Below are positions 13,997 through 27,696 of a DNA stretch of 64,000 nt, piece after piece. Below the pieces are notes generated by a model. The model ran no database searches. It had not been told where the DNA came from and was given only the letters and a program-made list of their open reading frames with translations. Where the stretch lies: the IMG/VR virus record IMGVR_UViG_3300043464_002284, positions 124,001 to 188,000 of that record; one strand, written 5' to 3'. Numbering within the stretch: the stretch's first letter is position 1; each line of letters starts with the position of its first letter. The translations under genes and the position numbers were made by a program.

Positions 13997-14012
13997 TTAA
14001 AAGGAAAGAACA

Positions 14013-14405: not shown

Positions 14406-14415
14406 GCACTCTCCG

Positions 14416-14493: not shown

Positions 14494-14921
14494 CGACAAC
14501 CTTACGGTATTGCAAGGAGACATCCACTTGACATCTAAAGTTTCTCTGCTATACTTGTCGATATAAGAGATAGAGAAAGAGAGAGTGAAGAATGAGTAGG
14601 TATTACGAAGGTCGTTTCAACCCGTACAATCGTCATGATACGGGAATGTATGTGGTCTATCGCAAGAGCGACAACAAGCACCTTGGAACGGTTGTGGATT
14701 GTCGTAGTGAGAGCGAAGCCAAGCGCAAGGCTGGCTATGAGTTTGGTTGTGAGTGCTATGTGAGTGAAATTGAGGAATAAAATGAAAACGAAAAAGAAAG
14801 AGTTGACAGCACACCAGAAAGCTGTTATACTCATGAATCGTGAAGCTAGTCGTGCAGTGAATCGTGTGAAGATGTTGGAACAGTTGTATCTTGAAACCAT
14901 GAAAGCAAAGGAACTTGTTAA

Positions 14922-15152
14922 ATGAAGTGCGTTGTTACCCATACGGATACTTTTGGTGGTGAAGCTAACTATGGTTGGGTGAATCGTTATGAGTTCATCC
15001 CCAAGAAGAATGCTTCTCAGCGTAGTGTTATTCGTAAGGCCAAGGCTCTGGCTGGTATGACAGCGGTCAAAGCTGAGACTTATGACTATGGTGATGGTTA
15101 TACCGTTAAGCCTCGCGGCTATGCTCAAATCATCTTTGTTGATTTTGAGTGA
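14922..15152 (+). CDS. Hypothetical protein
   Basis: ORF ends just before element 8. Confidence 0.6.
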   Translation: MKCVVTHTDTFGGEANYGWVNRYEFIPKKNASQRSVIRKAKALAGMTAVKAETYDYGDGYTVKPRGYAQIIFVDFE

Positions 15153-15171
15153 AAAAAATAATCTCTCGTCG

Positions 15172-15249
15172 TAAACCCTTTGTGCTCAAACACTTAGGGC
15201 CGACGCGGGGAGCCGGATTTGACGTAAGTCCTTATCTTGCATAGGGTTG
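15172..15249. repeat. Double-palindrome element 8
   Basis: Starts 15172/15225. Confidence 0.9.
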
Positions 15250-15330
15250 TGACGAAAGAGAATTTCTTACCGAATCTATTGACAATAGCCGATACTCCTG
15301 TAGAATGACTCAACCAAAGGAGGACAAGCT

Positions 15331-15876
15331 ATGTTCACGATGAAAGATTTGAGTCGTGTGCTTCCGGAACTCAAAGGATTGAAGCGGCCTGCTATTTTCT
15401 CTCCATCCAAGAGCGAATCAGCATATAAACTCTCTAAGATGGGGTCGCAGTTTCGTGGTCATGCAATTGAAAAGATGGTTAGGGATGGACTGCTGAAGAA
15501 GCACAAGACAAGCTATCATGGTGGATCTCATTCCCACGACATTACCTTGAATAAGGATGTTAGGATTGAAGTGAAATCAGCTTTAGCTACTCCTCTGGTT
15601 AGTAGCAGGACTAAGAAAATTACTAGATATAAATTTTCATTCAAGCATGTGCAATTGTCTAAGTTTGATATTCTTTTTCTGGTATATGTTACTCCTAATG
15701 GGCCTAAAGTCCGATGGATGACCAAAGCGACAGCGAGGGAGTTTGTTAGTAATCATCGTTCTAAGGCAAGCCATATCGATGTTACTACTTCTTCTTTTCG
15801 TAATCTTGAAGGAACAGCTTGGAAAAAGCTCAAGATGCCAGTAACGAAAAAGAAAAAGCAGAAAGCGAAAGCTTGA
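15331..15876 (+). CDS. PD-(D/E)XK nuclease-like protein
   Basis: RGHAIE...HDITL...RIEVKSA...FSF motif order; own promoter (15279-15306) and GGAGG RBS. Confidence 0.6.
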   Translation: MFTMKDLSRVLPELKGLKRPAIFSPSKSESAYKLSKMGSQFRGHAIEKMVRDGLLKKHKTSYHGGSHSHDITLNKDVRIEVKSALATPLVSSRTKKITRYKFSFKHVQLSKFDILFLVYVTPNGPKVRWMTKATAREFVSNHRSKASHIDVTTSSFRNLEGTAWKKLKMPVTKKKKQKAKA

Positions 15877-15878
15877 CG

Positions 15879-15955
15879 CAAGTCCTTGACTCCAAAGAAC
15901 TTGGGGCAAGGGCGGGCGCCCGGATTGTTATAACTCCTTATCGAATAAAGACTTA
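15879..15955. repeat. Double-palindrome element 9 (period 52)
   Basis: Starts 15879/15931. Confidence 0.85.
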
Positions 15956-16035
15956 CGAAAACCTTGCAATACTGAAAGATTCAAGTTCGCCCCTTGCATT
16001 TGCCGATAATATATGGTAGAATGAAGAGACGAGAA

Positions 16036-16120
16036 GAGAGTCGGAGCTATATCCTCCGGTACACGAGGAACCCACGGCAGTGTCTGCAACAGAGCATGGT
16101 CTGTTGTGCTACTGACTCTC
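16036..16120 (+). ncRNA. Putative ~85-nt structured small RNA
   Basis: GAGAGTCGG/CTGACTCTC closing stem and two internal hairpins; directly after promoter 15994-16022; no convincing ORF. Confidence 0.55.
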
Positions 16121-16223
16121 ATATCGTAAAATTTTTCTAAAGTTTCCGCTTGACAAATGTCGATAATTAGTGTAGACTTGTGGTATGGATGTTGTGATCG
16201 GTTTTCAATTTGAAAGGGTTTCT

Positions 16224-16628
16224 ATGAACGATGTGATTCTGTTTGGTTCGATTCTTGCGGCTGCTGCCGTTGCTGTTGTGGGTTTCGTCTTCTATTCGGT
16301 CTATGGTGGATCGAAGGCTAGCTTGGCGAATGCCCAAGAGGGTCAGGTTTTCAACTTTGTTTACGAGCAGCCTTTGCATGGAACGCATGAGCGTTTTCTT
16401 GCTAAGGTGATTGGCAAGCAGACGTTGACTGCTGACCAGATTGCGAGACTGAATCGCAAGAGTCGGTATCGTATCAATGATCCTGAGTTTGTGCGTACTG
16501 CCAATCTGGTAACGTGTCGAACTGCGGATGGTAAGGTGCGTAATTTCTACGCAGAGCGAGTTACGAAGTGCCGAAAGCCGTTGCTGGCCGGTGCTTTGTT
16601 CAAGAGCGGATTTGCTAACCTGTTCTAA
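16224..16628 (+). CDS. Membrane-anchored WYL-like domain protein
   Basis: N-terminal TM helix; FNFVYEQP...CRTADGKVRNFYAERV. Confidence 0.4.
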   Translation: MNDVILFGSILAAAAVAVVGFVFYSVYGGSKASLANAQEGQVFNFVYEQPLHGTHERFLAKVIGKQTLTADQIARLNRKSRYRINDPEFVRTANLVTCRTADGKVRNFYAERVTKCRKPLLAGALFKSGFANLF

Positions 16629-16664
16629 AAACTAGCAGTCTCTGCCTACTAACTGACCAACCCC

Positions 16665-16742
16665 TAACCCTTTGACACCAAAGGACTTAGGGTAAGGTCG
16701 GCCGCCCCGCTTCGTCGTAAGTCTTTATGCCCCAACACTTTA
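16665..16742. repeat. Double-palindrome element 10 (core inverted)
   Basis: Starts 16665/16718. Confidence 0.9.
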
Positions 16743-16826
16743 CGACAATTCTTTTTTGTTGAAGTTTTCCCTATTGACAAGCCGATAATAGTAGTGTAGA
16801 ATACAGGGAATCAAAAGGAGAAAAAG

Positions 16827-17090
16827 ATGCTGTTTACGCCATATGCTTTGACGGATAAGGTTACTCGCAAGGTTAGTGATGAGGGTATGATCGAATTCAG
16901 TGGGTTGTCTACTGGCGGTCGTCCTTTTTCCATAGTCACTCGACTTGACGATGCCCAGCGTTGGGTCAACGGAGAGTTGATTCAAATTGCTTTCCCGTAT
17001 CTCAATGCGGATGATCGTGAGATTCTCAAAACGGGAATTGATGCTCAGGGTTGGGAGGCAATGTTTGCCGGATCGGAGGATGACGAATGA
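16827..17090 (+). CDS. Phage hypothetical protein
   Basis: GELIQIAFPYLNADDREILKTGI motif; promoter 16774-16802; AGGAG RBS. Confidence 0.65.
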   Translation: MLFTPYALTDKVTRKVSDEGMIEFSGLSTGGRPFSIVTRLDDAQRWVNGELIQIAFPYLNADDREILKTGIDAQGWEAMFAGSEDDE

Positions 17091-17223
17091 GTACCGATAC
17101 CTATATGGTCATGAAGGGCAATAAGGTGGTAGGGTATGTTCATGCGTACAGTACCTATCATGCGTTGTCTCAGGCTGAGAAACTTTATGGGAAAAATTTG
17201 CTGATTGAGCGAATTACCCATAG

Positions 17224-17273
17224 TTGTCCCGCCTAACCCTGGCGGGTCGGGCTGAGTGGGTATAGTCAGCCAG
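17224..17273 (+). repeat. 50-bp ungapped motif, copy 1 (divergent)
   Basis: TTGT..C..CTAA...GG..TGG...AGTCAGCCAG. Confidence 0.7.
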
Positions 17274-17539
17274 TAGTCGGGGCTTGACAAAGAGTCTTTA
17301 ATAGAGTATATTGGGCAGAAAGGGAGAGAATTATGTTGAATAATGATGAGCGTATGGCTGTTTGTGACTGTGTGGCTGATTTTTCTATTCGTCTGTTTCG
17401 TGCTGCTACTGTTGATGATCAAGCTGTTCATAATGAATTGGATATTTTTTATGAGTTCTTTTGTAGGGCTCTTGAGATTGCCAAGAGTGAGGGTGCGGTT
17501 AGGGTTCGTGAGTCTATTGGGGCTAGTAACAACTAATCG

Positions 17540-17617
17540 TAAGTCCTTATCCTTAAAGAACTTAGGGATAGGGCGGGCGGACGAATTTGATGTAAGTGCT
17601 TGTGTATCATAGGGTTA
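17540..17617. repeat. Double-palindrome element 11
   Basis: Starts 17540/17593. Confidence 0.9.
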
Positions 17618-17658
17618 TGTAAATGCTAAAAAATTTTTGGAATTCCTACAGAAGCCTC

Positions 17659-17687
17659 TTGACAAGTGACGATAATAGATGTATACT
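17659..17687 (+). promoter_or_regulatory. Sigma70 promoter upstream of the ncRNA cluster
   Basis: TTGACA-AGTGACGATAATAGATG-TATACT. Confidence 0.85.
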
Positions 17688-17695
17688 TAGCACAT

Positions 17696-18177
17696 AAGCA
17701 GATGAGGGCCGCTGGCAGAATGATATCAAAGAAGCCACGGTTAAATGCAAGGCCGAGTATGGCATAACCCAATCTGCTTTACAATACAAAACTCGTGGGT
17801 CCATGCCTTGGACTAGGTTGGGTAACTCATTACGATAAGCCCCGCATGTCGCGGCAGCGATGGGGCTGACAGTGCCGGTTACGCACTGGATAGTAGTGCC
17901 AATCTATGGGGGATCGCGTCCTCACCACGTTATAATACAATCAGTAATCGTTCCCAAGAGCCAGACAGATTGCTTCATGAACAATCTCAGGGAGGTTTCC
18001 GTGGACGGTTTCCACTAGTGTTTACCTGGCCCAAGGGTTAAAAATATCGGGTATTAGTGGAGTATAGAACCGGAGTCGTAAATGGTTCGCTGATTACAAA
18101 CAGGGGTCGGATAGAAACCAAGTTTACTGGCTGGGTTGGATAATGCGTGATACCGGACATTATTCGTAAAACTATCG
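17696..18177 (+). ncRNA. ORF-free multi-domain structured RNA (four domains)
   Basis: Closing stems AAGCAGAT/ATCTGCTT, CGTGG/CCACG, GTAATC/GATTAC, GATAG/CTATC, separated by AC-rich linkers. Confidence 0.65.
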
Positions 18178-18250
18178 CTGGATATAACTCAAATGGCAGA
18201 GTTCCACTCAGAGATGAGAGGAGTTACAGGTTCAAATCCTGTTATCTGGT
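18178..18250 (+). tRNA. tRNA-like RNA with non-canonical anticodon arm (GAGA tetraloop)
   Basis: Acceptor CTGGATA/TATCTGG, D arm ACTC/GAGT, T arm ACAGG-TTCAAAT-CCTGT; no 7-nt anticodon loop. Confidence 0.6.
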
Positions 18251-18474
18251 AAGTCGATCCATTAACAGCCGGTATACAATACAAAGGAGAAGAGATGACT
18301 AAAGAAGAATCAGACAGAAATGCGGCCATAGTTTATGTTCTTAGGGTTCTTAAAAACCCAATGATGATCAGGAGCCCTGCTAAAAAAGACGCATTGACTT
18401 TAGCAGAGCAGTATGGTATAACGGTGACTGATTTGATTAATGAGTACGAAAAGATAGTAATGAGGGTATAAAGT

Positions 18475-18702
18475 ATGAGATGGAATCCTAATGAGCCAAT
18501 TACTCCGGGATATTATCTGTGTGCTGCTGTTGGATATAATAGACCAATAATGCTCTGTTGGGATATTGACAATAAAGAATGGGGTGAATGGACTCATGGT
18601 GAGTATGATGATGGTATACTTCAATGGGAACCGTTTGATAAGTCTATCGTTAAATATCATATGGGACTGAATGAAATTTCTATGCCGGAGGGTTGGGTAT
18701 GA
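18475..18702 (+). CDS. Hypothetical Trp-rich protein
   Basis: ORF in plus-strand run. Confidence 0.55.
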   Translation: MRWNPNEPITPGYYLCAAVGYNRPIMLCWDIDNKEWGEWTHGEYDDGILQWEPFDKSIVKYHMGLNEISMPEGWV

Positions 18703-18993
18703 TCTACTTAAATATTAATGAGATCGAACGGTTGGCCGAAATTGTTGCTGAACTGGTTAAGTTGGATATGTGTGTGATTGCTGAGTTGAAGGGGACTAAG
18801 TGGAGTATTGAGGTAACTAAGGGATGAAAACTACAACGCTTGAGCTGACCAAAACCGAAATTAACTATTTGTATAATCTGGTATGTGAGAATATGGAGCG
18901 TGGAGAATATTGGGGAAATCAGAATCAGTTTATGAAGATGCAAGAACGTGTTTTTAATAAACTGATGGACTGCGAAACAGAGGTGGCATCCTA

Positions 18994-19248
18994 ATGGAAT
19001 GGATTAGTTTCCACGGGCCTCGTCGCCCTATTAATGGACAAAAGATCATCTATTATGGTGAGGCTATTGGTGTGTGGCGTGGAAAGTATAGGATAAACTA
19101 TACTGACCCTTTTTGTATTCACAATATTGATTGTAGTGAAGCTCCCGGCAATGTAGACTATATGGATGCTCCATACTGGCAACCCGATGAGGGGCAACCA
19201 AAACCACCACCACCAGAACAGCCCTACCCACCAGATTATCCTAGTTGA
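18994..19248 (+). CDS. Hypothetical protein with Pro-rich tail
   Basis: ORF ends at element 12. Confidence 0.6.
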   Translation: MEWISFHGPRRPINGQKIIYYGEAIGVWRGKYRINYTDPFCIHNIDCSEAPGNVDYMDAPYWQPDEGQPKPPPPEQPYPPDYPS

Positions 19249-19250
19249 CA

Positions 19251-19328
19251 TAAGTCCTTGCTGCTAAAGAACTTAGCTCAAGGGCGGGCGGCCGGTTTCG
19301 ACGTAAGTCCTTATCTCTAAAGACTTTA
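19251..19328. repeat. Double-palindrome element 12
   Basis: Starts 19251/19304. Confidence 0.9.
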
Positions 19329-19408
19329 CGATTAGCAATATTTTTTCAAGATTTCCTCTTGACTTGTCGATAATAGTAGTGTAAGATAGTGGTAACACGA
19401 AAGGGAAT

Positions 19409-19654
19409 ATGATGACTGTTGCTGAATTGATCGAAGAACTGAACAAGCTGCCCCAAGATATGCTTGTGCTTGTACCGGGTTATGAGGGTGGATACGACAA
19501 TATCGAAGTTCAGAGGAATGGGGCTGTTGTTCTGGACGATAATTGGGATGGACAAGAAAAGTTTTATTGGTATAATGGGCGACACGCAACGTACTACAAG
19601 GATATGGAAGGCGACGAGCCTACGTCCTGCGTCGTTATCGGGAGGGGAAAATGA
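19409..19654 (+). CDS. Phage hypothetical protein
   Basis: MTVAELIEELNKLPQD...GYEGG motif; promoter 19359-19387. Confidence 0.65.
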   Translation: MMTVAELIEELNKLPQDMLVLVPGYEGGYDNIEVQRNGAVVLDDNWDGQEKFYWYNGRHATYYKDMEGDEPTSCVVIGRGK

Positions 19655-20160
19655 AAACGGCAGAAAAACACGCCGAAGTACGATTTCATCTGCTCAATGG
19701 GCAAAACTATCGGAAATGGCAAGTAAATATTATGCAAGGGAAGAAGAGGGTTGACCAATTTTATGTCGATCCGGCCGAATACCAGTTAGAGATGCGTGGT
19801 TGCAAGCTGGTAAATAAGGTGGCTAGGGCAAAATGGGTCAATAAGAAACAGAAAAAGAATGTGAGTGGTTGGGTGCAGTGCGAGGAGGTTATGCTTCGCA
19901 AGGATTTTTATCCCTCTTTGCCTATTGACAATCTTGAGAAGTTGTATTATAATCCCATTCGTGATGTTCACTGGCGACGAGAGAGTGACGGTGGTGAATT
20001 TGTTTGGGATAACAGTGAATATGACACCTTAGTTACTGATGGACGACAGGTTCATATTCTGGAAGAACGTAACGGAAATTTTGACGGTATTTACGAGATC
20101 GACCCTAAATATACAGAAAGTTTTGGAATTTATGATCAAAATCGAACTGAGCGTGCGTGA
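19651..20160 (+). CDS. Hypothetical protein
   Basis: Overlaps the upstream ORF stop (ATGA coupling). Confidence 0.65.
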   Translation: MKTAEKHAEVRFHLLNGQNYRKWQVNIMQGKKRVDQFYVDPAEYQLEMRGCKLVNKVARAKWVNKKQKKNVSGWVQCEEVMLRKDFYPSLPIDNLEKLYYNPIRDVHWRRESDGGEFVWDNSEYDTLVTDGRQVHILEERNGNFDGIYEIDPKYTESFGIYDQNRTERA

Positions 20161-20503
20161 GTCGTTGAACATGATTGCAAATGGTTGCAGTCTCGATATG
20201 TTCGACAAGATTGTGACTTCGTTGGAAGTGGCATTGGGTGTGAACCAGCGTCGTAAGGTAACCATCACGGGTGGGATGACCACGGATAACCGTATCCGCT
20301 GCATCAAAGTCATCCGCGAACACACCGGATGGGGTTTGAAGGAGTCGAAGGATTGGACCGATGTTCTTGTTGGTCGCTACAACGAGAGCGGCTTTTGGAG
20401 TGGTGGTGGACACCCGAACACCATGACTCTGAAAACGCCGGAAGTGGCGGAGCAACTGCTGCGTGACCTGACCAGTCATGGTTGTGTGGGTTATCTCGTA
20501 TGA
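20132..20503 (+). CDS. Ribosomal protein bL12 (L7/L12) C-terminal-domain-like protein
   Basis: NRIRCIKVIREHTGWGLKESKDWTD matches the L12 CTD K-x-x-R-x-x-TGLGLKEAK signature. Confidence 0.7.
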   Translation: MIKIELSVRESLNMIANGCSLDMFDKIVTSLEVALGVNQRRKVTITGGMTTDNRIRCIKVIREHTGWGLKESKDWTDVLVGRYNESGFWSGGGHPNTMTLKTPEVAEQLLRDLTSHGCVGYLV

Positions 20504-20505
20504 CC

Positions 20506-20583
20506 TAAAGCCTTGTCCCTAAAGAACTTAGGGCGAGGCTGGGCGGCCGAATTTGATCTAAGTCCTTATCCCCAAACAACTTA
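20506..20583. repeat. Double-palindrome element 13
   Basis: Starts 20506/20559. Confidence 0.9.
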
Positions 20584-20786
20584 GGACAAAATCAAAAATC
20601 TTTGAGGCCCACTCAAGTTCCTGCTTGACAATGACGATACTATACTGTAGAATGAGAGTATCACAAGTCAAGACTCCGCGATGATGCCAACAAGAAAAAC
20701 CATCACGACGGACTTGACAAGTGGGTAACAGTAACGTATACTGATACTAGAACGATTGGAAACTGTAACATTTTTGGAGAAATGAA

Positions 20787-21047
20787 ATGAAGAAGTTTAG
20801 CTTTGCTGTTGATATTGTTGGCGACGAGATTGACTCTGCGGATGTGGTTGCTACGCTTACAAAGGCTCTGAACGATGAGCTTCCTGGTGATGTTCATGCG
20901 AATGTTAAGCCCGCTGGTATCAAGGCTTTTAGTGAACAGGGTTATAAGGTGTGGCGAGCTAGGGTTACTGGTGTGACTGCCGAGGCTGCGGGAGATGCCC
21001 ACGATGGCAAGGTAGAGAAGGAGACAGAAACCGAAACGGTTGCGTGA
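20787..21047 (+). CDS. Hypothetical protein
   Basis: GGAG RBS. Confidence 0.6.
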   Translation: MKKFSFAVDIVGDEIDSADVVATLTKALNDELPGDVHANVKPAGIKAFSEQGYKVWRARVTGVTAEAAGDAHDGKVEKETETETVA

Positions 21048-21062
21048 GTTAACAAAACTGGA

Positions 21063-21307
21063 CTATGCCAGTATAAAGGGCTAACGCCCCACCGATAAAT
21101 AGGTGAGATTTTAGGCATAGTGCGGCGGGGTCAAACCCGCGTAATGATAGTTCGTTGCAAGACTAAAAGGTGCAACTTAGAGGGTTTAACCAACCAGATA
21201 AGTCGGGTGGTTCCGTCGAAGTTATCGACCTCTAGAGTATATACTAATGACGATGGTAAGACGATAACGCCATCAAACCGTAATGCCTACATGGGACGCC
21301 ATGTGGG
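21063..21307 (+). ncRNA. Putative structured RNA upstream of tRNA-Arg
   Basis: Stems CTATGCC/GGCATAG, GCGGG/CCCGC, GTTGCA/TGCAAC, TAGAGG/CCTCTA, GATGG/CCATC, CCTACATGG/CCATGTGGG. Confidence 0.6.
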
Positions 21308-21344
21308 CTTGCGGCGTTGAGTGGGTACGATATAATAGAGAGAC

Positions 21345-21416
21345 GGCCCCATAGTTAAATGGATATAATAAGTGACTTCTAATCTCTAGTTGCAGGTTCG
21401 ATTCCTGCTGGGGCTA
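21345..21416 (+). tRNA. tRNA-Arg(TCT)
   Basis: Cloverleaf; loop CTTCTAA; T arm GCAGG-TTCGATT-CCTGC. Confidence 0.85.
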
Positions 21417-21421
21417 TTGTT

Positions 21422-21495
21422 GGGGGCGTAGATCAATTGGTTAGATCGCTAGCTTGTCACGCTAGAGGTTGCGGGTTCGAGTCCCGTCGCTCTCG
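21422..21495 (+). tRNA. tRNA-Asp(GTC)
   Basis: Cloverleaf; CTAGC-TTGTCAC-GCTAG. Confidence 0.92.
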
Positions 21496-21502
21496 TTTGT
21501 TG

Positions 21503-21580
21503 TAAACCCTTGCTACTAAAGCACTTAGAGCAAGTTCGCCGGGCCGGGGTCGTCGTAAGTCCTTATCTCACAAGGGTTTG
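21503..21580. repeat. Double-palindrome element 14 (directly after tRNA-Asp)
   Basis: Starts 21503/21556. Confidence 0.9.
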
Positions 21581-21660
21581 CATCAAGAATAATTTTGTGA
21601 AGTTTTTCGCTTGACGTTGCCGATACTATAGTGTAGAATCGGTAGACACAGGAGAAGAAC

Positions 21661-22365
21661 ATGAAAACTGCTGACGGTAATGATAAGTTGGGTAAGGGTT
21701 GTATTGTTGTGAGTCGTCCGGTTGGCGATACTTGCCCACCCGATTGCGATTATCTCGGAAACGGCTGCTATGCCGAAGCTACTGAAAACCAGTATAAAAA
21801 TGCTCGCACTGCCGGGTTTGCTAATATCATAACGGAAAAGAATAAAATCCGCTCTATGATTCTGGAAGCAAAGCGTCGTGAGAAGTCTATCCGTTGGCAT
21901 GAACGTGGCGACTGGTTTCTCAATGGCGAACTTGACCTAGACTATGTTGCGAATGTAACGTGGGCTTGTGAGAGTATTCTTGCCGATGGTGATACGTTGC
22001 CCGATATGTGGTTTTATACTCATATCTACGATTCTCGGCTTGTGAGTCTGGAAAAGTATATGAATGTATACGCTAGTGTGCATGATGATAACGATATGGG
22101 CGAAGCACTATCACAGGGTTTCAAGCTGTTCGCATGGTGTGACAGCGATATGAAGATTGCACCCAAGCGACCCAAGAGCAAGGCAAAGGCCGAAGCATGG
22201 CGACAAGCACTGCCGAAGCTGGTGGTTCTCAATGCGACAAAGTTTGTTGTGTGTCCAGAAATCCGTCGTGGTCGTTCGGAAATCACTTGCACTGGCACAA
22301 AAGATAGTATATCATGCGACTTGTGTGTGCGTGGTTTGGCTAATGTATTGTTTCCCGCACACTAA
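21661..22365 (+). CDS. Gp88-like Cys-motif phage protein
   Basis: TCPPDC...GCYA...IRWHERGD...FYTH pattern; C-terminal CP...C...C..C. Confidence 0.6.
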   Translation: MKTADGNDKLGKGCIVVSRPVGDTCPPDCDYLGNGCYAEATENQYKNARTAGFANIITEKNKIRSMILEAKRREKSIRWHERGDWFLNGELDLDYVANVTWACESILADGDTLPDMWFYTHIYDSRLVSLEKYMNVYASVHDDNDMGEALSQGFKLFAWCDSDMKIAPKRPKSKAKAEAWRQALPKLVVLNATKFVVCPEIRRGRSEITCTGTKDSISCDLCVRGLANVLFPAH

Positions 22366-22368
22366 ACC

Positions 22369-22446
22369 TAAGTCCTTGACCGTAAAGAACTTACGGCAAG
22401 GGCGAGCGGACGGATCGGTCGTAAGTCCTTGACTCATAAGACTTTA
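22369..22446. repeat. Double-palindrome element 15
   Basis: Starts 22369/22422. Confidence 0.9.
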
Positions 22447-22529
22447 GAGATTATTCAAGTTTCACTATTGCATTTGTCGATAAGATACTGTAGAATGGTG
22501 GAGTATCACCAACTTGGAAAGGGAAAGCT

Positions 22530-23096
22530 ATGAGCTATGTTGGATTGTATGATGACGCAGGAAGTAAGAACGCTTTCTACATTGTCAAAGATAAAAAGAT
22601 TGGCCGGAAGCGTGTGGGCTTCAAAGAGTTTGAAAATAAGCAAGAGGCAGAGTTTGCCCATCGGGTTCAAAAGCATCTGGCTCAGTTTGATTTGGCCCCT
22701 ATGGTATATGGGGATGTTGGTTTTATTCGTAGGCATGATGGTGAGTTGACTTGTTATGGTTATTTGACCGAAGTGGCTCGGCCTATGTCTGAATGTCATG
22801 ATGAAGATTGTGATGGTGAATGTTTTCGGAGCGAGTGTAAGAATGGTACTACTATCTCTGAACTAGTTTATGATTTGGGTGAACATGGCTTAGAGTATAA
22901 CGATGCCCATAAGGGTAATTTTGGTTATGTTCGACGTAAGGGTTCATGGGTTCCGGTTGCTATCGACCTTGGAATCGAGAGCTTTACTGATTGGGATGAA
23001 GATATTTATGGAAAGTTTGATTATGCTGCTGACGAGTTTGATGACTATGGACGATGCAATTGTGTTCAATGCAAAAAGTTCCGAGAGGAAGAATAA
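22530..23096 (+). CDS. Protein-kinase-like (ePK/APH fold) protein
   Basis: LAPMVYG, DAHKGNFG (HxxN), AIDLG (DxG); C-terminal CxCxxC. Confidence 0.6.
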   Translation: MSYVGLYDDAGSKNAFYIVKDKKIGRKRVGFKEFENKQEAEFAHRVQKHLAQFDLAPMVYGDVGFIRRHDGELTCYGYLTEVARPMSECHDEDCDGECFRSECKNGTTISELVYDLGEHGLEYNDAHKGNFGYVRRKGSWVPVAIDLGIESFTDWDEDIYGKFDYAADEFDDYGRCNCVQCKKFREEE

Positions 23097-23499
23097 TGAG
23101 CAAATACTATATCAAGTGTGGAACACTAGAATTAATTTATTCCTGCAACAAATGTCCACGGGATGCTGCGATGGATGCTATTTGGGAAACAAATGAAAAT
23201 GATACACTAGATGAGCATTTCTATATAGATGAGCGTGGATATAAAGACTATACAAATGCTGATGGATTAACTTGTGTGTTACATACTAGCCACATTCTAA
23301 AAGATGCCGGATGGAGTATTGAATAATGTGGACAAAAATAGACGATAAAAAAGTAAGACACTTATGGGAATGTGCTGATTGTGATAATCTAGTTTATGTT
23401 GAACCTTGGTTCTATTCCGAAAATGGCGAACCCTTTTGCACAAAGTGTGAGAGGGATATGGAGTATATTCGAACAGAAGTGGATATGTAACACTTTCCG

Positions 23500-23577
23500 C
23501 AAACCCTTGCTGCGTAAGCACTTAGGGTGAGCGGGGGCGGCCGGATTTGACGTAAGTTGTTGCAGGATGCGGACTTA
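23500..23577. repeat. Double-palindrome element 16
   Basis: Starts 23500/23553. Confidence 0.9.
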
Positions 23578-23615
23578 GAGAAATTCCAGAAAACTCCTAA
23601 AGTTTAGGGTGGTGA

Positions 23616-24029
23616 TTGGTCGATAATAAGGATATGAGAACGAGACGAGAATCAACAAGGGGTGAGAGAATGATCCAGTGGGTTGGGATTGTGATTACGA
23701 TTTTGGGTCTGGCGTATACGGGTGTGAAGGACTACCAGAAAGGGGACATAAAATTTCCCAAGATGCCTCAAAAACAGGTCTTGACAAAGGTAGTTTATCC
23801 GATACAATACTGTCTGATGGCTTACGATCCTAACATTGATAGAATTTTTTACCTACACGAAAATGGAATATGGTATGATTACGCTCCACAACAACGACGA
23901 TATTCGACCACGCCGCAACCATATCAAGCTCAAGGTGCGACCGCAGTGGCAGGTTCCTACGGGTCACAAGGAACACCGGCATACCGTTATGGACAATCGC
24001 CCCAAGCGTCAGCGAACCCGATCCGCTGA
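23616..24029 (+). CDS. Membrane-anchored hypothetical protein
   Basis: TM helix WVGIVITILGLAY. Confidence 0.55.
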   Translation: MVDNKDMRTRRESTRGERMIQWVGIVITILGLAYTGVKDYQKGDIKFPKMPQKQVLTKVVYPIQYCLMAYDPNIDRIFYLHENGIWYDYAPQQRRYSTTPQPYQAQGATAVAGSYGSQGTPAYRYGQSPQASANPIR

Positions 24030-24079
24030 AAATCGTAGGGCTTGCGAGAATGGGGACTATTGAGTATAATTAGTAGTAT

Positions 24080-24152
24080 GCCAGTGTAGCTCAGTCAGCA
24101 GAGCGTCAAATTTGTAATTTGAATGTCGCGGGTGCAACTCCTGCCACTGGCT
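24080..24152 (+). tRNA. tRNA-Thr(TGT)
   Basis: GCCAGTG/CACTGGC acceptor; TCAAA-TTTGTAA-TTTGA; atypical D and T loops. Confidence 0.8.
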
Positions 24153-24218
24153 TTATGAGTCGAAAGAAAAAACGTATGTAAACGCTCTATCTGGTGTATA
24201 TATTCGTATCCAGAGGAG

Positions 24219-24746
24219 ATGTCTATGATTGTAAAATGTAGTTGCTGTAATAAAGAGTTTAATAAGCAGAAGTGCGAGGTAATTAAGTCAAAAAATAATT
24301 ACTGCTCACGTTCCTGTGCAGCAAAAATAAACAATAGGTTATTTAAAAAGAGAAACAAAAAAGTTAGACATTGTAGGAACTGTAAGATTGAAATTATTGG
24401 CAAGGGAAAACTTTATTGTAGTATTAAATGTCAAAATGTTTTTCAGTCAGAAATAAAGATAAAGTCATGGCAGCTAGGAATGGACGATGGATACGAAACT
24501 AATGGAACAGTAAGGAGATATATAAAAAAATTCTTACTGGAAAAAAGAGGTCAGAAATGTGAGGAGTGTGGTTGGAATAAAATTAATCCAAATACCAATA
24601 AGTGTCCATTGGAAATACATCATAGGGATGGAAATTATAAAAATAATATAGAAGAAAACTTACAAATACTATGTCCGAATTGCCATTCATTGACAGATAC
24701 ATATAAGAATATGAACAAAGGTAATGGTAGAGAATGCAGAAGATGA
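24219..24746 (+). CDS. HNH endonuclease inserted in the tRNA cluster
   Basis: CEECG...LEIHHRDG...NN...NLQILCPNCH; N-terminal CSxxC repeats. Confidence 0.88.
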   Translation: MSMIVKCSCCNKEFNKQKCEVIKSKNNYCSRSCAAKINNRLFKKRNKKVRHCRNCKIEIIGKGKLYCSIKCQNVFQSEIKIKSWQLGMDDGYETNGTVRRYIKKFLLEKRGQKCEECGWNKINPNTNKCPLEIHHRDGNYKNNIEENLQILCPNCHSLTDTYKNMNKGNGRECRR

Positions 24747-24817
24747 TCCGGGATGGTGAAATGGTATCACAGCAGACTTTGGATCTGCGTTTCTACGTTC
24801 AAGTCGTAGTCCCGGAA
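24747..24817 (+). tRNA. tRNA-Gln(TTG)
   Basis: TCCGGGA/TCCCGGA; GCAGA-CTTTGGA-TCTGC. Confidence 0.9.
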
Positions 24818-24821
24818 TTAT

Positions 24822-24893
24822 TGGCGAGTAGCACAACGGTTGTGCAAGCGGCTGTTAACCGCTAGGTTACAGGTTCGAATCCTGTCTCGCCAG
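24822..24893 (+). tRNA. tRNA-Asn(GTT)
   Basis: TGGCGAG/CTCGCCA; AGCGG-CTGTTAA-CCGCT. Confidence 0.9.
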
Positions 24894-24898
24894 CTTGA

Positions 24899-24985
24899 GG
24901 AAGAATGGCAGAGTGGTCTAATGCATCTGATTACTAATCAGAAGAAGCGTAAAAACTTCCGTGGGTTCGAATCCTACTTCTTCCG
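24899..24985 (+). tRNA. tRNA-Ser(ACT)
   Basis: GGAAGAA/TTCTTCC, G73, long variable arm, TCTGA-TTACTAA-TCAGA. Confidence 0.85.
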
Positions 24986-24988
24986 CTC

Positions 24989-25070
24989 GGTAGATTACTC
25001 AAGTGGACAACGAGGGCAGACTGTAAATCTGCTGGCATTGCCTTCGCTGGTTCGAATCCAGCATCTACCA
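24989..25070 (+). tRNA. tRNA-Tyr(GTA)
   Basis: GGTAGAT/ATCTACC; GCAGA-CTGTAAA-TCTGC; long variable arm. Confidence 0.92.
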
Positions 25071-25071
25071 C

Positions 25072-25149
25072 TAAGTTGTTGGTATGAAAGGACTTAGGAC
25101 AAATTCGGCGGGCCGCGTTCGACGTAAGTGATTACAGAGTAACGACTTA
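25072..25149. repeat. Double-palindrome element 17 (directly after tRNA-Tyr)
   Basis: Starts 25072/25125. Confidence 0.9.
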
Positions 25150-25234
25150 GGATTTGTTTAAAGTTTGTTCTTGACAGCTGCCGATAACTAGTGTATGATT
25201 GCTAATCGGAGGCTGATGTTTGAGTTGCGAGTGC

Positions 25235-25306
25235 GGCCCCATAGTATAGTAGTTAGTACGCTGGCCTTTCACGCCGGAGACCTGGGAGCGTAACCCAGTG
25301 GGGTCA
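25235..25306 (+). tRNA. tRNA-Glu(TTC), atypical T loop
   Basis: GGCCCCA/TGGGGTC; CTGGC-CTTTCAC-GCCGG; T loop AGCGTAA. Confidence 0.75.
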
Positions 25307-25307
25307 T

Positions 25308-25357
25308 TTGTTTCTGCTAATCCTACGGATTTGGAAGTTGTGGAAGTAGTCAGCGAG
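25308..25357 (+). repeat. 50-bp ungapped motif, copy 2 (immediately after tRNA-Glu)
   Basis: TTGTTTCTGCTAATCCTACGGATTTGG...TAGTCAGCGAG. Confidence 0.85.
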
Positions 25358-25613
25358 AATTTCTAAACATTTGCCTCTTGACAAGCCGATAATGGTATGG
25401 TAGACTATTGGAATAAGAAAGGAACCTAAGATGAAGAACCTTCGCATCTATGATATTGTGACCGAGGACGGTCAAACCCTGGCTGACATTCAACTCTCTA
25501 TGCAAGAGGATTTTGATTGGGCTGATGTTTTTGATAAGCTCTATGATTTTACCACAGAAAACGTCCAAAGTTATTCCTACCAAGAAATTACCGTACAAAC
25601 TGAATAACTAGAT

Positions 25614-25686
25614 GGGCCTTTAGCTCAATTGGCAGAGCAAGGAGCTTTTAACTCTTAGGTTCGGGGTTCGAGTCCCCGAGGGCCCA
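25614..25686 (+). tRNA. tRNA-Lys(TTT)
   Basis: GGGCCTT/AGGGCCC; AGGAG-CTTTTAA-CTCTT. Confidence 0.92.
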
Positions 25687-25740
25687 CTTGACAATGGTTG
25701 GTTGTTGGTGTAGAATATGGGTAAGAAAGGGAGTAGAAAT

Positions 25741-25917
25741 ATGAGATATGAAGATTATTATGATGGCTACAACTATGACTATGATGAATTGGTAGAAAAT
25801 ACCGAGGATCTTGGTCTGGATGAAGAACCTTGGATGAATGATATTGAGGAAGAAGATGACGAGGTTCCATCTTACGGTAAGAATTATTATCCAAGTATTG
25901 AAGATGAAGATGAATAA
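25741..25917 (+). CDS. Very acidic small protein
   Basis: D/E/Y-rich; RBS GGGAG. Confidence 0.6.
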   Translation: MRYEDYYDGYNYDYDELVENTEDLGLDEEPWMNDIEEEDDEVPSYGKNYYPSIEDEDE

Positions 25918-25922
25918 TTTTT

Positions 25923-26003
25923 GTGTGTGCTTCTAGGTGGGACTAGAACCTTTTCTTTATTCCTTTCTTATAATGGGCTGTTGGTTCAAATCCAACCACA
26001 CAC
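25923..26003 (+). pseudogene. tRNA-like element with degenerate anticodon arm
   Basis: GTGTGTG/CACACAC acceptor; GTTGG-TTCAAAT-CCAAC T arm; TTCTAG/CTAGAA D-like arm; pyrimidine tract in place of the anticodon arm. Confidence 0.55.
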
Positions 26004-26006
26004 TTT

Positions 26007-26513
26007 ATGAACGCTTGGCAACAAGAGCTTGATGACTTCCGGCGTACCCCAGATGGTAAGATTATCCAAGGTGCTGCTCACACTAGCCGAGTATTAAATC
26101 ACAAATATCGGAATGGTGTGATTATCAAGGCTGTTTGTTCTCTGCGTAAAATTGAGAATAATTTCGATAGCATTGCTTGTTGTGGCGTAAGTGGTTTGAT
26201 GGTAGTGCCACAGATTGCAGAGATTCTCAATAAGAATATTATAGTTGTTCGTAAGGATGAAAAGCGATATAGCGAATTCTTTCTTGAGGGTGTCTCTCCG
26301 TCTCGATATATTATTGTAGATGATTTGATCTGTTCTGGAAATACTCTTAAGCATATTATTGCTAGTATTTCTGATGATACTCCAAGAGCAAAGTGTATCG
26401 GGGCGTACTTCTATCTCGGTGAGGAATGTTCTTTCAATGCTTCCACCGATTCTAAATTTTTTGAGAAGCAGTTTGGGACGATTATCCTAAACCCTTACCA
26501 GCCAAAGACTTAG
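26007..26513 (+). CDS. Type I phosphoribosyltransferase-family protein
   Basis: PRPP-binding motif IIVDDLICSGNT. Confidence 0.8.
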   Translation: MNAWQQELDDFRRTPDGKIIQGAAHTSRVLNHKYRNGVIIKAVCSLRKIENNFDSIACCGVSGLMVVPQIAEILNKNIIVVRKDEKRYSEFFLEGVSPSRYIIVDDLICSGNTLKHIIASISDDTPRAKCIGAYFYLGEECSFNASTDSKFFEKQFGTIILNPYQPKT

Positions 26514-26565
26514 GACGAATCCGGACGCCCCGGCCAGCCGTAAGTCCTTATCCTGAAACAACTTA
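26488..26565. repeat. Double-palindrome element 18 (core inverted; overlaps the PRTase 3' end)
   Basis: Starts 26488/26541. Confidence 0.9.
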
Positions 26566-26667
26566 CGACCTGCGGAATTTTTCCAAGGTTTTCGCTTGAC
26601 AGTGACGATAACATAGTGTAGAATCAGCGTATAAGAACGATTGAACAGCAACACGAAAGGGATGATT

Positions 26668-27618
26668 ATGGCTCATGCAGTTGAACAGATGATGTTTGTT
26701 GGTGCGACCCCGTGGCACGGTCTGGGCAACCAGCTCGACGAGGCTCCCACGGTTTCGGAGGCGATGACTGCCGCCGGTTTGGATTGGGAAGTTGGTCTGA
26801 AGGATTTGGTCACGGTGGACGGTCAACCAGTTCCGGCCCGTGCGACCTATCGCAAGACCGACGACAGTATTCTGGGCGTTGTCGGCCCGCGATACACTCC
26901 GCTGCAAAACAGCGAAGCGTTCGATTGGTTCCAGCCGTTTCTGGACGCTGGTGAGTGTGCGTTGCATACTGCCGGTTCGCTCCACAGCGGTCAGAAAGTT
27001 TGGGTTCTGGCCCAACTGAACCGCGACAATAGCGAGATCGTGAAGGGCGACGAGGTTGGGAAGTTTATTCTTCTCAGCAACTCGCACGATGGCACGACTG
27101 CTATCCGGGTTGGCTATACGCCGATCCGCGTTGTGTGTGCTAATACTATGGCAATGGCCCATAGCAAGAGCAGTGGTTCCAAGTTGATCCGTATTCGTCA
27201 CACACGTTCCAGCAAGACGAATCTGGAAAACGTGCGAGACATTATGGACAACATCAACATGGAGTTTGAGGCGACTGCGGAGCAATTCAAGTTCCTCGCG
27301 TCGAAGAACTTCAATCAGGCCGACGTTCGTCGCTATGTCAAGGTGATGCTCGACATCGACGGTACGCCGGACGATCAGATCAAGACTCGTACCAGAAACA
27401 TCATGGACGAGATTCTGAATCTGGTCGAAGGCCCGAAGCAGAGTGCTACGGGCGTTCGCGGAACGTGGTGGGCCGCTTATAACGGCTTCAACGAGTATCT
27501 GAATTACAACAAGGGTCGCACCGAAGATAATCGGCTCGACAGTCTGTGGTTCGGATCGAACGCGAATGACAACACCAAGGCTCTGGAAAAGGCCATGCAG
27601 TTCGCTCAGGCACTCTAA
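26668..27618 (+). CDS. DUF932 family phage/plasmid-like protein
   Basis: TPWHGLG...AGLDWEV...YTPLQN...TAGSL..GQKVW...LLSNSHDG...TPIRVVCANT...RHT...W.AYN...EY. Confidence 0.9.
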   Translation: MAHAVEQMMFVGATPWHGLGNQLDEAPTVSEAMTAAGLDWEVGLKDLVTVDGQPVPARATYRKTDDSILGVVGPRYTPLQNSEAFDWFQPFLDAGECALHTAGSLHSGQKVWVLAQLNRDNSEIVKGDEVGKFILLSNSHDGTTAIRVGYTPIRVVCANTMAMAHSKSSGSKLIRIRHTRSSKTNLENVRDIMDNINMEFEATAEQFKFLASKNFNQADVRRYVKVMLDIDGTPDDQIKTRTRNIMDEILNLVEGPKQSATGVRGTWWAAYNGFNEYLNYNKGRTEDNRLDSLWFGSNANDNTKALEKAMQFAQAL

Positions 27619-27642
27619 TACCTCGTAGTGGGGGTAATGTGG

Positions 27643-27677
27643 GAGCCGCCACTCAGCAATGGGTGGCGGTTCTTTTT
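27643..27677 (+). terminator. Strong intrinsic terminator
   Basis: GAGCCGCCACTCA-GCAA-TGGGTGGCGGTTC followed by T5. Confidence 0.9.
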
Positions 27678-27696
27678 ACTCCTAGACCACTTGACG

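What the first reader, a model, noticed from the sequence alone, without database searches (positions are those of the whole stretch)
21063..21307. Structured ~245-nt RNA upstream of tRNA-Arg/tRNA-Asp
Seen: six successive stems, including a three-way junction (CTATGCC/GGCATAG enclosing GGGC/GCCC and CACC/GGTG) and CCTACATGG-GACG-CCATGTGGG. The overlapping 66-aa ORF has no RBS and looks spurious. Inference: a second uncharacterised phage ncRNA co-transcribed with tRNAs.
Basis: partly seen in the sequence, partly recalled or inferred. Interest (0 to 1): 0.6.

Follow-up and report, generated by a model that had tools for sequence, protein, structure and literature searches.

The report
Pistol ribozyme plus new phage RNA
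The flagged stretch in this 238-kb lake phage is a known type of self-cutting RNA (a pistol ribozyme with an unusual insertion) joined to a previously undescribed folded RNA and the leader hairpin of a phage tRNA, an arrangement that would cut a discrete small RNA out of an early transcript.

Summary
The structure is real, but the region holds three things, not one RNA.

1. **21057-21146, pistol self-cleaving ribozyme (Rfam RF02679).** Relatives score 51-57.6 bits against a threshold of 34.5. The window's copy is missed because a 28-nt two-hairpin insertion (21078-21105) splits it. The predicted cut lies between G21141 and U21142.

2. **21147-21275, an RNA domain with no Rfam match.** It has a pseudoknot, a three-way junction whose two hairpin loops pair with each other, and a hairpin. 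Across 72 distinct homologs, 96.5% of cells pair, against 83% in shuffles and 17-46% when partners are slid. Sixteen of 25 pairs show compensatory changes.

3. **21276-21320, a long hairpin.** It belongs to the tRNA-Arg leader and is also present in relatives that lack parts 1 and 2.

The 66-aa ORF survives in 4 of 72 homologs and is spurious.

Inferred mechanism: early promoters transcribe the 86-aa ORF, the ribozyme, the new domain and the tRNAs together. The ribozyme cuts off the mRNA, and RNase P cuts at the tRNA. This would release a folded RNA of about 200 nt whose function is unknown. No RNA-seq run was listed, so ends and cleavage are untested.

The parts
20625..20742 (+). Two tandem sigma-70-like promoters (TTGACA-17-TAGAAT at 20625-20653; TTGACA-17-TATACT at 20714-20742). 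They are the likely source of the transcript that carries the 86-aa ORF and the ribozyme.
   Evidence: Consensus scan, 11 of 12 matches each. Function is inferred.
20787..21047 (+). 86-aa ORF of unknown function, with no Pfam or PHROG match. In relatives, tRNA-Arg(UCU) lies just downstream in 77 of 80 loci.
21057..21146 (+). Pistol-class self-cleaving ribozyme interrupted by an insertion. P1 is 21057-21061/21068-21072. The pseudoknot is 21062-21067/21116-21121. The AUAAA linker is 21073-21077. P2 is 21108-21110/21143-21145. P3 is 21125-21130/21135-21140. The catalytic-core residues are G21114, G21115, G21122, C21123 and G21124.
   Evidence: Homologs reach 51-57.6 bits against Rfam RF02679, gathering score 34.5. 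The window's copy equals that of L008 except for the insertion and scores 18.1 + 14.7 bits in two pieces. P1, pseudoknot, P2 and P3 covary in L216/L221, L209/L248, L357, L080 and L021. Catalytic residues are mapped from PMC6154101.
21078..21105 (+). 28-nt insertion of two small hairpins (GGGC-UAAC-GCCC and CACC-GAUAAAUA-GGUG). It sits at the one non-conserved position of the pistol P1-P2 linker.
   Evidence: Absent from most homologs and present in about ten. In those, the stems are kept and the second loop varies in length.
21141..21142 (+). Predicted self-cleavage site, G21141 | U21142. This is the two-nucleotide GU junction between the 3' strands of P3 and P2.
   Evidence: Position follows from the Rfam alignment. 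The published cleavage site is in PMC4604425. Cleavage was not tested here.
21148..21176 (+). Domain D1, an H-type pseudoknot. Stem 1 is 21148-21152/21161-21165 and stem 2 is 21154-21159/21171-21176. In 'short-type' homologs a plain covarying hairpin takes its place.
   Evidence: About ten distinct complementary stem-1 pairs are seen, such as AGTC/GACT, GGCC/GGCC, CCCT/AGGG and GGGT/ACCC. Cognate duplexes reach 4 bp or more in 24 of 24 sequences.
21177..21235 (+). Domain D2, a three-way junction. The closing helix is 21177-21183/21229-21235. Hairpin D2a is 21184-21194 and hairpin D2b is 21197-21226. The loops of D2a and D2b pair with each other (AACCA 21188-21192 with UGGUU 21208-21212). The conserved junction nucleotides are RAUAA and GAAG.
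   Evidence: Covariation. In the closing helix 4 of 6 pairs show double changes, and in D2b 5 of 5. In the loop-loop helix, pair 102-126 is AU:58/GC:14 and pair 103-124 is CG:69/UA:3, with no unpaired cell in either.
21252..21274 (+). Domain D3, hairpin GAUGGU...(G/A)CCAUC. It is preceded by an AU-rich linker (21236-21251).
   Evidence: 97.2% of cells paired and 3 of 6 pairs with double changes.
21276..21320 (+). Leader hairpin L. The lower stem is 21278-21282/21310-21314, the upper stem is 21285-21294/21299-21308, and the loop is GACG. It belongs to the tRNA-Arg leader.
   Evidence: z = -5.9. In the upper stem 6 of 10 pairs show double changes. The lower stem is compensated in L068, L168 and the beta/gamma variants. 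It is present in relatives that lack 21048-21284.
21309..21336 (+). Sigma-70-like promoter TTGCGG-16-TATAAT between the leader hairpin and tRNA-Arg. It is absent from several homologs, where the tRNA follows directly.
   Evidence: Read from the sequence and from the alignment. It falls below the scan's -35 cut-off, so function is inferred.
21345..21496 (+). tRNA-Arg(UCU) at 21345-21416 and tRNA-Asp(GUC) at 21421-21496. RNase P cleavage at 21344|21345 would set the 3' end of the upstream RNA.
   Evidence: ARAGORN and Rfam. The RNase P step rests on established knowledge of tRNA maturation.

Best explanation
The region is a processing cassette made of three parts.

1. **21057-21146** is a pistol self-cleaving ribozyme. 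It carries a tolerated 28-nt two-hairpin insertion in its P1-P2 linker.
2. **21147-21275** is a new structured RNA domain. It consists of a pseudoknot, a three-way junction with kissing hairpin loops, and a hairpin.
3. **21276-21320** is the leader hairpin of phage tRNA-Arg(UCU).

**Shown here**
- Pistol family membership of the homologous sequences, and identity of the window's copy apart from the insertion.
- Presence of all mapped catalytic residues.
- Covariation of every helix.
- No conserved ORF.
- Near-obligate linkage of the new domain to an upstream pistol.

**Inferred mechanism**
1. Host RNA polymerase starts at the early promoters at 20625 and 20714. It transcribes the 86-aa ORF, the ribozyme, the new domain and the tRNAs as one RNA.
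2. The pistol cuts itself between G21141 and U21142. The ORF mRNA is left ending in the ribozyme fold with a 2',3'-cyclic phosphate, and the downstream RNA starts with a 5'-hydroxyl.
3. RNase P cuts at the 5' end of tRNA-Arg. This would release a discrete folded RNA of about 200 nt (21142-21344).

My best guess is that this released RNA acts in trans as a protein-binding accessory RNA of the early infection programme, not as a base-pairing regulator. It has almost no conserved single-stranded stretch. Its function is not known.
For: **Pistol**
- Rfam RF02679 hits of 52.4-57.6 bits (gathering score 34.5) in L068, L081, L087, L091, L102, L121 and L216.
- L008, whose sequence equals the window's minus the insertion, scores 51.0 bits. 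The window is split into 18.1 and 14.7 bits.
- P1 covaries: ACUGG/CCAGU becomes ACUCG/CGAGU. The pseudoknot covaries: ACUAUG/CAUAGU becomes ACUGUG/CACAGU and ACCCAG/CUGGGU.
- The cleavage site and catalytic residues come from PMC4604425 and PMC6154101.

**New domain**
- 72 distinct homologs were aligned.
- For the core alone, 96.5% of cells pair, against 83.4% in shuffles and 17-46% when partners are slid. Sixteen of 25 pairs show double changes. The covariation score is 0.377 against 0.146, reached by 0 of 500 shuffles.
- Stem 1 of the pseudoknot covaries.
- G-U pairs fix the strand.

**No coding potential**.

**Linkage**
- 77-78 of 79 distinct cores have an intact pistol directly upstream.
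- Seven pistols without the core sit directly before ORFs with ribosome-binding sites or before tRNAs. This fits a general transcript-cutting role.
- In L081, L041, L044, L091 and L109, tRNA-Arg follows the leader hairpin directly.

**Transcription**: promoters lie upstream and no + strand terminator lies between them and the element.
Against: - No transcript data: none was listed for this sequence. Transcription, cleavage and RNA ends are all untested.
- The window's own pistol fails the Rfam threshold, and the insertion could impair it.
- A sigma-70-like promoter lies between the element and tRNA-Arg in this window (21309-21336), so the tRNAs need not depend on the long transcript.
- The new domain folds no better than shuffles by nearest-neighbour energy (z = -0.67). 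This is expected for a pseudoknotted fold but gives no support.
- Most homologs were fished with an exact 18-mer inside the pistol. The pistol's invariance in that set is therefore partly ascertainment.
- About 50 of 80 relatives do without the whole element, so it is dispensable.
Confidence: 0.7

Rival explanations
1. The new domain is a cis-acting sensor, not a released RNA. In this reading it binds a ligand, protein or tRNA and tunes either pistol cleavage (a natural allosteric ribozyme) or read-through and maturation of the downstream tRNA or gene.
For: - Its first helix starts 2 nt after the pistol P2 3' strand.
- The three-way junction with kissing loops has the architecture of several riboswitch aptamers (own knowledge).
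- In the beta and gamma variants the leader hairpin is followed by a U-run, so it looks like a terminator.
- In L216/L221 the element precedes a small ORF instead of a tRNA.
Against: - No conserved alternative pairing was found between the domain and either the pistol or the leader hairpin.
- The segment CCGUA pairs with the 3' partner, with compensation in L068, L168 and the beta/gamma variants. It does not form an aptamer-closing helix.
- The common alpha-type leader hairpin has no U-run.
- The same pistol and the same leader hairpin work without the domain in many relatives.
Confidence: 0.15
2. The three-way junction D2 is itself a second self-cleaving ribozyme. It would be hammerhead-like or of a new class, working with the pistol to cut the RNA at two places.
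For: - Ribozymes cluster with other ribozymes in phage DNA (PMC4604425).
- D2 has the topology of a type III hammerhead: three helices, a loop-loop contact between two of them, and a GAA after the second hairpin.
- Some homologs read CUGAUAA where the hammerhead has CUGAUGA.
Against: - No hammerhead or other ribozyme family matched the region at the E-value limits used: up to 10 for the window stretch, up to 1 for the homolog loci.
- The positions equivalent to the essential G5 and G8 are A in most homologs.
- The pair next to the would-be cleavage site is G-C, not A-U.
Confidence: 0.07
3. The conservation acts at the DNA level. The 5' block would be a promoter (TTAACA-17-TATAAA) with an operator-like inverted repeat, or a recombination cassette that shuffles genes in this variable region. 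The RNA folds would then be incidental.
For: - A TTGACA-like hexamer lies 15-18 nt upstream of TATAAA in about two thirds of homologs.
- The block flanks a 44-aa ORF as a duplicate in L109/L140.
- The region is mosaic, with presence/absence variation.
Against: - The block matches a covariance model of sequence plus structure far above threshold.
- TATAAA lacks the near-invariant final T of a -10 hexamer and was not called by the scan.
- A start inside the block would delete pistol P1.
- G-U pairs and compensatory changes in every downstream helix are RNA-level signals.
Confidence: 0.05
4. The 66-aa ORF (21120-21320) encodes a protein.
For: An open frame from GTG exists in the window.
Against: - There is no ribosome-binding site.
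- The frame reaches 60 or more codons in only 4 of 72 homologs and mostly stops within 8-25 codons.
- Indels are not multiples of three.
Confidence: 0.01

Closest known systems
Pistol self-cleaving ribozyme (Rfam RF02679; Weinberg et al. 2015; Harris et al. 2015, PMC4604425)
   Same: - P1, the 6-bp pseudoknot, P2 and P3 are all present.
- The AUAAA linker, the UUAGGC and GNGCG core and the two-nucleotide GU cleavage junction are present.
- It lies in phage DNA.
- Homologs score 51-57.6 bits.
   Different: - The window's copy has a 28-nt two-hairpin insertion at linker position 22, so it fails the family threshold.
- It sits in a freshwater jumbo phage rather than in Firmicutes or gut sequences.
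- It is placed directly 5' of a structured RNA, a tRNA or an ORF. This suggests a transcript-processing role that has not been assigned to pistol.
Theta (minimal HDV-like) ribozymes next to phage tRNAs (PMC10879173)
   Same: It is a small self-cleaving ribozyme in a tailed phage, physically tied to tRNA genes and proposed to process the tRNA transcript without host nucleases.
   Different: - It belongs to a different ribozyme class.
- Theta ribozymes are proposed to trim tRNA 3' trailers. Here the ribozyme lies 5' of the tRNA (or of the new RNA) and cuts at its own 3' end.
- The environment is a lake, not the gut.
T4 stable RNAs rnaC and rnaD (species 1 and 2) beside tRNA-Arg
   Same: They are structured stable RNAs of unknown function, encoded next to tRNA-Arg(UCU) in a phage tRNA region and presumably cut out of the tRNA precursor.
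   Different: - In T4 they lie 3' of tRNA-Arg.
- rnaC contains a tRNA-like T-arm.
- No sequence or fold similarity to 21147-21275 was seen, and no ribozyme is involved.
GOLLD and ROOL ornate RNAs (10.1101/2024.12.08.627333)
   Same: They are phage-borne, lake- or gut-derived, tRNA-adjacent structured RNAs of unknown function (genomic context from my own knowledge).
   Different: Those are several times larger (size from my own knowledge) and are Rfam families. Neither matches here.

Membership tests
Pistol ribozyme (RF02679) | Score at or above the Rfam gathering threshold (34.5 bits) | tested here: inconclusive
   Seven homolog loci and L008 score 51.0-57.6 bits (alignment for L081). The window's own copy scores only 18.1 + 14.7 bits because a 28-nt insertion splits it. 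Apart from that insertion it is identical to L008.
Pistol ribozyme (RF02679) | P1 hairpin whose loop forms a 6-bp pseudoknot with the P2-P3 junction | tested here: met
   P1 is ACUGG/CCAGU and the pseudoknot is ACUAUG/CAUAGU in the window. Both are kept through compensatory changes in L216/L221, L209/L248 and L357.
Pistol ribozyme (RF02679) | P2 and P3 helices joined on the 3' side by a junction of exactly two nucleotides (GU) holding the scissile bond | tested here: met
   P3 is 21125-21130/21135-21140, followed by G21141 and U21142, followed by the P2 3' strand 21143-21146. P2 has only 3 standard pairs plus a mismatch but covaries in L216, L080 and L021. The junction rule is taken from PMC4604425.
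Pistol ribozyme (RF02679) | Conserved catalytic residues (purine 32, G33-C41, G40 and G42 in env25 numbering) | tested here: met
   These map to G21114, G21115-C21123, G21122 and G21124 through the Rfam alignment and PMC6154101.
Pistol ribozyme (RF02679) | Mg2+-dependent self-cleavage giving 2',3'-cyclic phosphate and 5'-OH ends | not testable with these tools
   This needs an in vitro transcript. No RNA run was listed.
Hammerhead ribozyme | Three-way junction with the CUGANGA and GAAA core and a match to an Rfam hammerhead model | tested here: not met
   D2 has the topology and a GAA. The first box reads RAUAA or CUAAUAA in most homologs. No hammerhead model matched at the E-value limits used: up to 10 for the window stretch, up to 1 for the homolog loci.
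T-box leader or other riboswitch | Match to an Rfam aptamer model and a conserved switch between aptamer and expression platform | tested here: not met
   The only chance-level hit was TPP at 10.4 bits, E = 9.3. The UGG in the D2b loop covaries with the D2a loop, so it is used internally. No alternative pairing with the leader hairpin was found.
T4 rnaC/rnaD-type stable RNAs | Sequence or fold similarity to T4 species 1 and 2 RNAs | tested here: not met
   Reading the T4 sequences and their predicted folds beside the element showed no similarity. The phage-collection blastn matched tRNA genes only. The gene order also differs.

The most novel reading that the evidence does not exclude
The 130-nt domain at 21147-21275 is a new functional RNA class that phages deliver through a natural 'ribozyme - cargo RNA - tRNA' cassette. 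In the most novel form of this reading, it is a sensor fused to the pistol P2, making the first natural allosteric pistol ribozyme. Alternatively it is a new self-cleaving or protein-sequestering RNA used during host takeover.
Probability: 0.15. Interest if true: 0.85.

Novelty: new variant of a known kind. Interest (0 to 1): 0.6.

Why it matters
No cellular role is assigned to pistol ribozymes in the papers read here.

In this clade of lake jumbo phages the same pistol sits exactly at the boundary between an early mRNA and one of three things: a tRNA, another gene, or a new structured RNA. That placement points to a concrete and testable job, namely cutting polycistronic early transcripts without host nucleases. 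It parallels what was proposed for theta ribozymes at tRNA 3' ends.

The locus also shows two further things:
- A pistol can carry a sizeable insertion at one linker position. Such insertions hide copies from standard family scans.
- The locus supplies a new, well-covarying RNA fold (pseudoknot plus kissing-loop three-way junction) with defined predicted ends, ready for biochemical and structural work.

Tried and rejected
- **Rfam on the window.** Nothing was found at the gathering threshold apart from tRNAs and a tmRNA. The pistol appeared only as sub-threshold pieces. I first dismissed these as chance and recognised them only after scanning homologs.
- **GenBank phages.** A blastn search matched tRNA genes only.
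- **RNA-seq.** None was listed for window:19500-23500.
- **MFE closing helix.** I first took the helix between 5' UGCGG and CCGUA as real. I rejected it because CCGUA is compensated with the 3' UGCGG in L068, L168 and the beta/gamma variants.
- **5' block.** I first read it as a promoter with an operator-like inverted repeat, and read ACTGG/CCAGT and CTATGCC/GGCATAG as competing hairpins. The pistol P1 and pseudoknot explain both.
- **T4 rnaC/rnaD.** Fetched and folded, with no similarity.
- **Short core patterns in viral contigs.** These gave mostly chance hits, but they did yield the divergent homologs L209, L216, L221, L248 and L357.
- **Core pattern in 185,579 species genomes.** It found one true copy, on a 141-kb MAG contig, and four chance hits in a Clostridia gene.
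- **Antisense targets.** A search of the phage genome for targets of the conserved AU-rich linker found nothing.
- **Catalogue of 10,006 viral candidate RNAs (PMC10690425).** Its supplements are not held, so I cannot say whether parts of this element are listed there.
- **Covariance model.** None was built. MAFFT alignments with hand-set pairs sufficed.
- **D1 pseudoknot.** It could not be scored with the count of structure pairs because MAFFT put its three registers out of step. A cognate versus non-cognate complementarity test was used instead.

Full report
**Setting.** The window is bases 124001-188000 of a 237,915-bp virus record with direct terminal repeats. GC content is 36.8%. The window carries 12-13 tRNA genes and a tmRNA. 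The flagged stretch lies between an 86-aa ORF (20787-21047) and tRNA-Arg(UCU) (21345-21416) followed by tRNA-Asp. Two strong sigma-70-like promoters lie upstream of the ORF. No + strand terminator-like site lies between them and the tRNAs. Neighbouring genes are small early-region genes, mostly without known families.

The 245 nt fold at -83.3 kcal/mol, z = -4.54. Split up, the signal comes mainly from the last hairpin (21276-21320, z = -5.9). The middle 129 nt give z = -0.67. Energy alone therefore does not establish the middle part, and comparative data were needed.

**Relatives.**
- A search with the downstream 234-aa gene gave 80 related viral loci.
- An exact 18-mer from the element gave 33 viral and 94 metagenomic stretches.
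- Searches with core patterns and with the 86-aa ORF added divergent copies.
- In all, 72 distinct full-length homologs were aligned.
- The element is single-copy in its own genome.
- Among 185,579 species genomes, one core pattern found a single true copy, on a 141-kb MAG contig.

**Presence and absence.** Of 80 loci holding a homolog of the 86-aa ORF, 77 have tRNA-Arg(UCU) just downstream. Only about 28 carry the element. The rest have a 54-115-nt leader. In those 'empty' loci the sequence equivalent to 21285-21320 is still present. The last hairpin therefore belongs to the tRNA-Arg leader, not to the optional element.

**The 5' third is a pistol ribozyme.**
- A permissive Rfam scan of eight homolog loci gave Pistol (RF02679) at 52.4-57.6 bits in seven of them. 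The gathering score is 34.5 and E-values ran from 2.6e-8 to 4e-7.
- The alignment assigns ACUGG/CCAGU to P1 and AUAAA to the linker. GAUU/AAUR is P2 and GCGGGN...NCCCGC is P3.
- The P1 loop ACUAUG pairs with CAUAGU to form the class-defining 6-bp pseudoknot.
- The divergent copies keep these helices through compensatory changes. P1 becomes ACUCG/CGAGU. The pseudoknot becomes ACUGUG/CACAGU or ACCCAG/CUGGGU. P2 becomes CUU/AAG. P3 becomes GGAACAG/CUGUUCC.
- In the window, 28 nt forming two small hairpins replace the non-conserved U between AUAAA and A. The covariance model therefore finds only two pieces, 18.1 and 14.7 bits.
- L008, otherwise identical over the ribozyme, scores 51.0 bits.
- About ten homologs carry the insertion. 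Both stems are kept and the second loop varies in length, as expected of a tolerated structured expansion.
- The residues reported as catalytic are all present once mapped through the alignment. These are purine 32, G33-C41, G40 and G42.
- Published work places the scissile bond in the two-nucleotide GU junction between the 3' strands of P3 and P2 (PMC4604425). Here that is G21141 | U21142.

**The middle part is new.** No Rfam family matches it, at E up to 10 in the window stretch and up to 1 in the homolog loci. Counted on the 72-sequence alignment for five hand-set helices:
- 96.5% of cells pair, against 83.4% in shuffles and 17-46% when partners are slid.
- Sixteen of 25 pairs show changes on both sides.
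- The covariation score is 0.377 against 0.146, reached by 0 of 500 shuffles.

The fold has three units.
- **D1 (21148-21176)** is an H-type pseudoknot in 'long-type' copies such as the window. About ten different complementary versions of stem 1 are seen, and cognate duplexes reach 4 bp or more in 24 of 24 sequences. Short-type copies have a plain covarying hairpin instead.
- **D2 (21177-21235)** is a three-way junction. It has a 7-bp closing helix, a short hairpin with loop CUAACCA, and a 5-bp hairpin with loop GUGGUU.
  - The two loops are complementary and covary together (AACCA/UGGUU, AAUCA/UGAUU, AAGCCA/UGGCUU).
  - At the two varying pairs of that helix, no sequence is unpaired.
  - The junction nucleotides RAUAA and GAAG are conserved.
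- **D3 (21252-21274)** is a covarying hairpin.

Many G-U pairs fix the + strand as the RNA strand. The 66-aa ORF is open for 60 or more codons in 4 of 72 homologs and usually stops within 8-25 codons.

**The leader hairpin.** The lower stem is compensated in L068 (ACGCA/UGCGU), in L168, and in variants where the whole hairpin is swapped (CCGAUAG/CUAUCGG). This speaks against the closing helix in the minimum-energy fold.

**Linkage and mechanism.**
- Of 79 distinct copies of the new domain, 77-78 have an intact pistol immediately upstream. One has a 4-nt deletion in P1.
- Seven distinct pistols lack the domain. They sit directly in front of ORFs with ribosome-binding sites or of tRNAs.
- In L216/L221 the full element precedes a small zinc-ribbon-like ORF instead of the tRNA.
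- In several homologs tRNA-Arg starts a few bases after the leader hairpin.

The simplest reading is this:
1. The pistol is a transcript-cutting module.
2. It separates the upstream mRNA from whatever follows.
3. Together with RNase P at the tRNA, it would excise the new domain plus leader hairpin as an RNA of about 200 nt with a 5'-hydroxyl.

These steps are inferred. No RNA run was listed. In this window a TTGCGG-16-TATAAT lies between the hairpin and tRNA-Arg, so the tRNAs may also be made independently.

**Function of the released RNA.** The function is unknown. It has hardly any conserved single-stranded run, and no antisense match was found in the phage genome. I therefore favour a protein-binding or otherwise structural role over base-pairing. 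A cis-sensor role and a second-ribozyme role remain possible and are scored as rivals.

**Comparison with known systems.**
- **Pistol.** The ribozyme is a pistol by every sequence and structure criterion testable here except the threshold score of the window's own interrupted copy.
- **Theta ribozymes.** The functional parallel is the theta ribozymes proposed to process phage tRNA 3' trailers (PMC10879173).
- **T4 rnaC/rnaD.** These lie 3' of tRNA-Arg and show no similarity.
- **Catalogue of 10,006 viral candidate RNAs (PMC10690425).** It may contain fragments of this element. Its tables are not held here.

**Verdict.**
- The finding is a new variant of a known kind. It is a pistol ribozyme with an insertion, in a new genomic role, coupled to an undescribed RNA domain.

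Noticed in passing
window 52964-53318 (+): The phage encodes a full-length tmRNA (Rfam RF00023, 91.5 bits). ARAGORN did not report it.
   Followed up: no
window 18178-18250 (+): A weak extra tRNA-like hit (Rfam tRNA 37.8 bits) that ARAGORN does not call. It may be a divergent or decayed tRNA.
   Followed up: no
window about 8,500-27,700, both strands (e.g. 20510-20590, 21500-21590): At least 15 copies of an intergenic module. Each has a hairpin, a GC-rich run (GGGCGGGCCG-like) and a second hairpin around GTAAGTCCTTATC...ACTTAC. The two copies checked (near 20560 and 21557) lie about 50-65 nt upstream of a TTGAC-17-TAnAAT promoter. The module recalls the promoter-stem-loop cassettes of T4-type variable regions.
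   Followed up: partly
L109 2547-3122 (-); L140, L161, L192: Two pistol copies flank a 44-aa ORF (MKFTVEITDNQDF...). The ribozyme cassette may act as a recombination point for inserting small genes.
   Followed up: partly
L014, L011, L004 and other 'empty' loci, about 65 nt before tRNA-Arg: Loci lacking the element have ACTC-TATG-GAGT followed by TATAAT, where filled loci have pistol P1 followed by AUAAA. This could be a remnant left by deletion of the ribozyme and the new domain. It now reads as a good TTGCGT-17-TATAAT promoter.
   Followed up: partly
window 24899-24986 (+): ARAGORN calls a tRNA-Ser with anticodon ACT. Relatives have either ACT or GCT at the same place. An A at the wobble position is unusual.
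   Followed up: no
window 24219-24746 (+) and 57023-58018 (+): HNH endonuclease ORFs. The first lies inside the tRNA cluster between tRNA-Thr and tRNA-Gln, which fits the mosaic gene order seen among relatives.
   Followed up: no
window 20787-21047 and L387-L466: The 86-aa ORF of unknown function is tied to tRNA-Arg(UCU) in 77 of 80 related loci. This holds whatever lies between them and hints at a functional link.
   Followed up: partly
window 4866-6677 (+): A full-length GlmS-like glutamine-fructose-6-phosphate aminotransferase gene. It is about 41% identical to copies in Acinetobacter and Campylobacter phage records.
   Followed up: no
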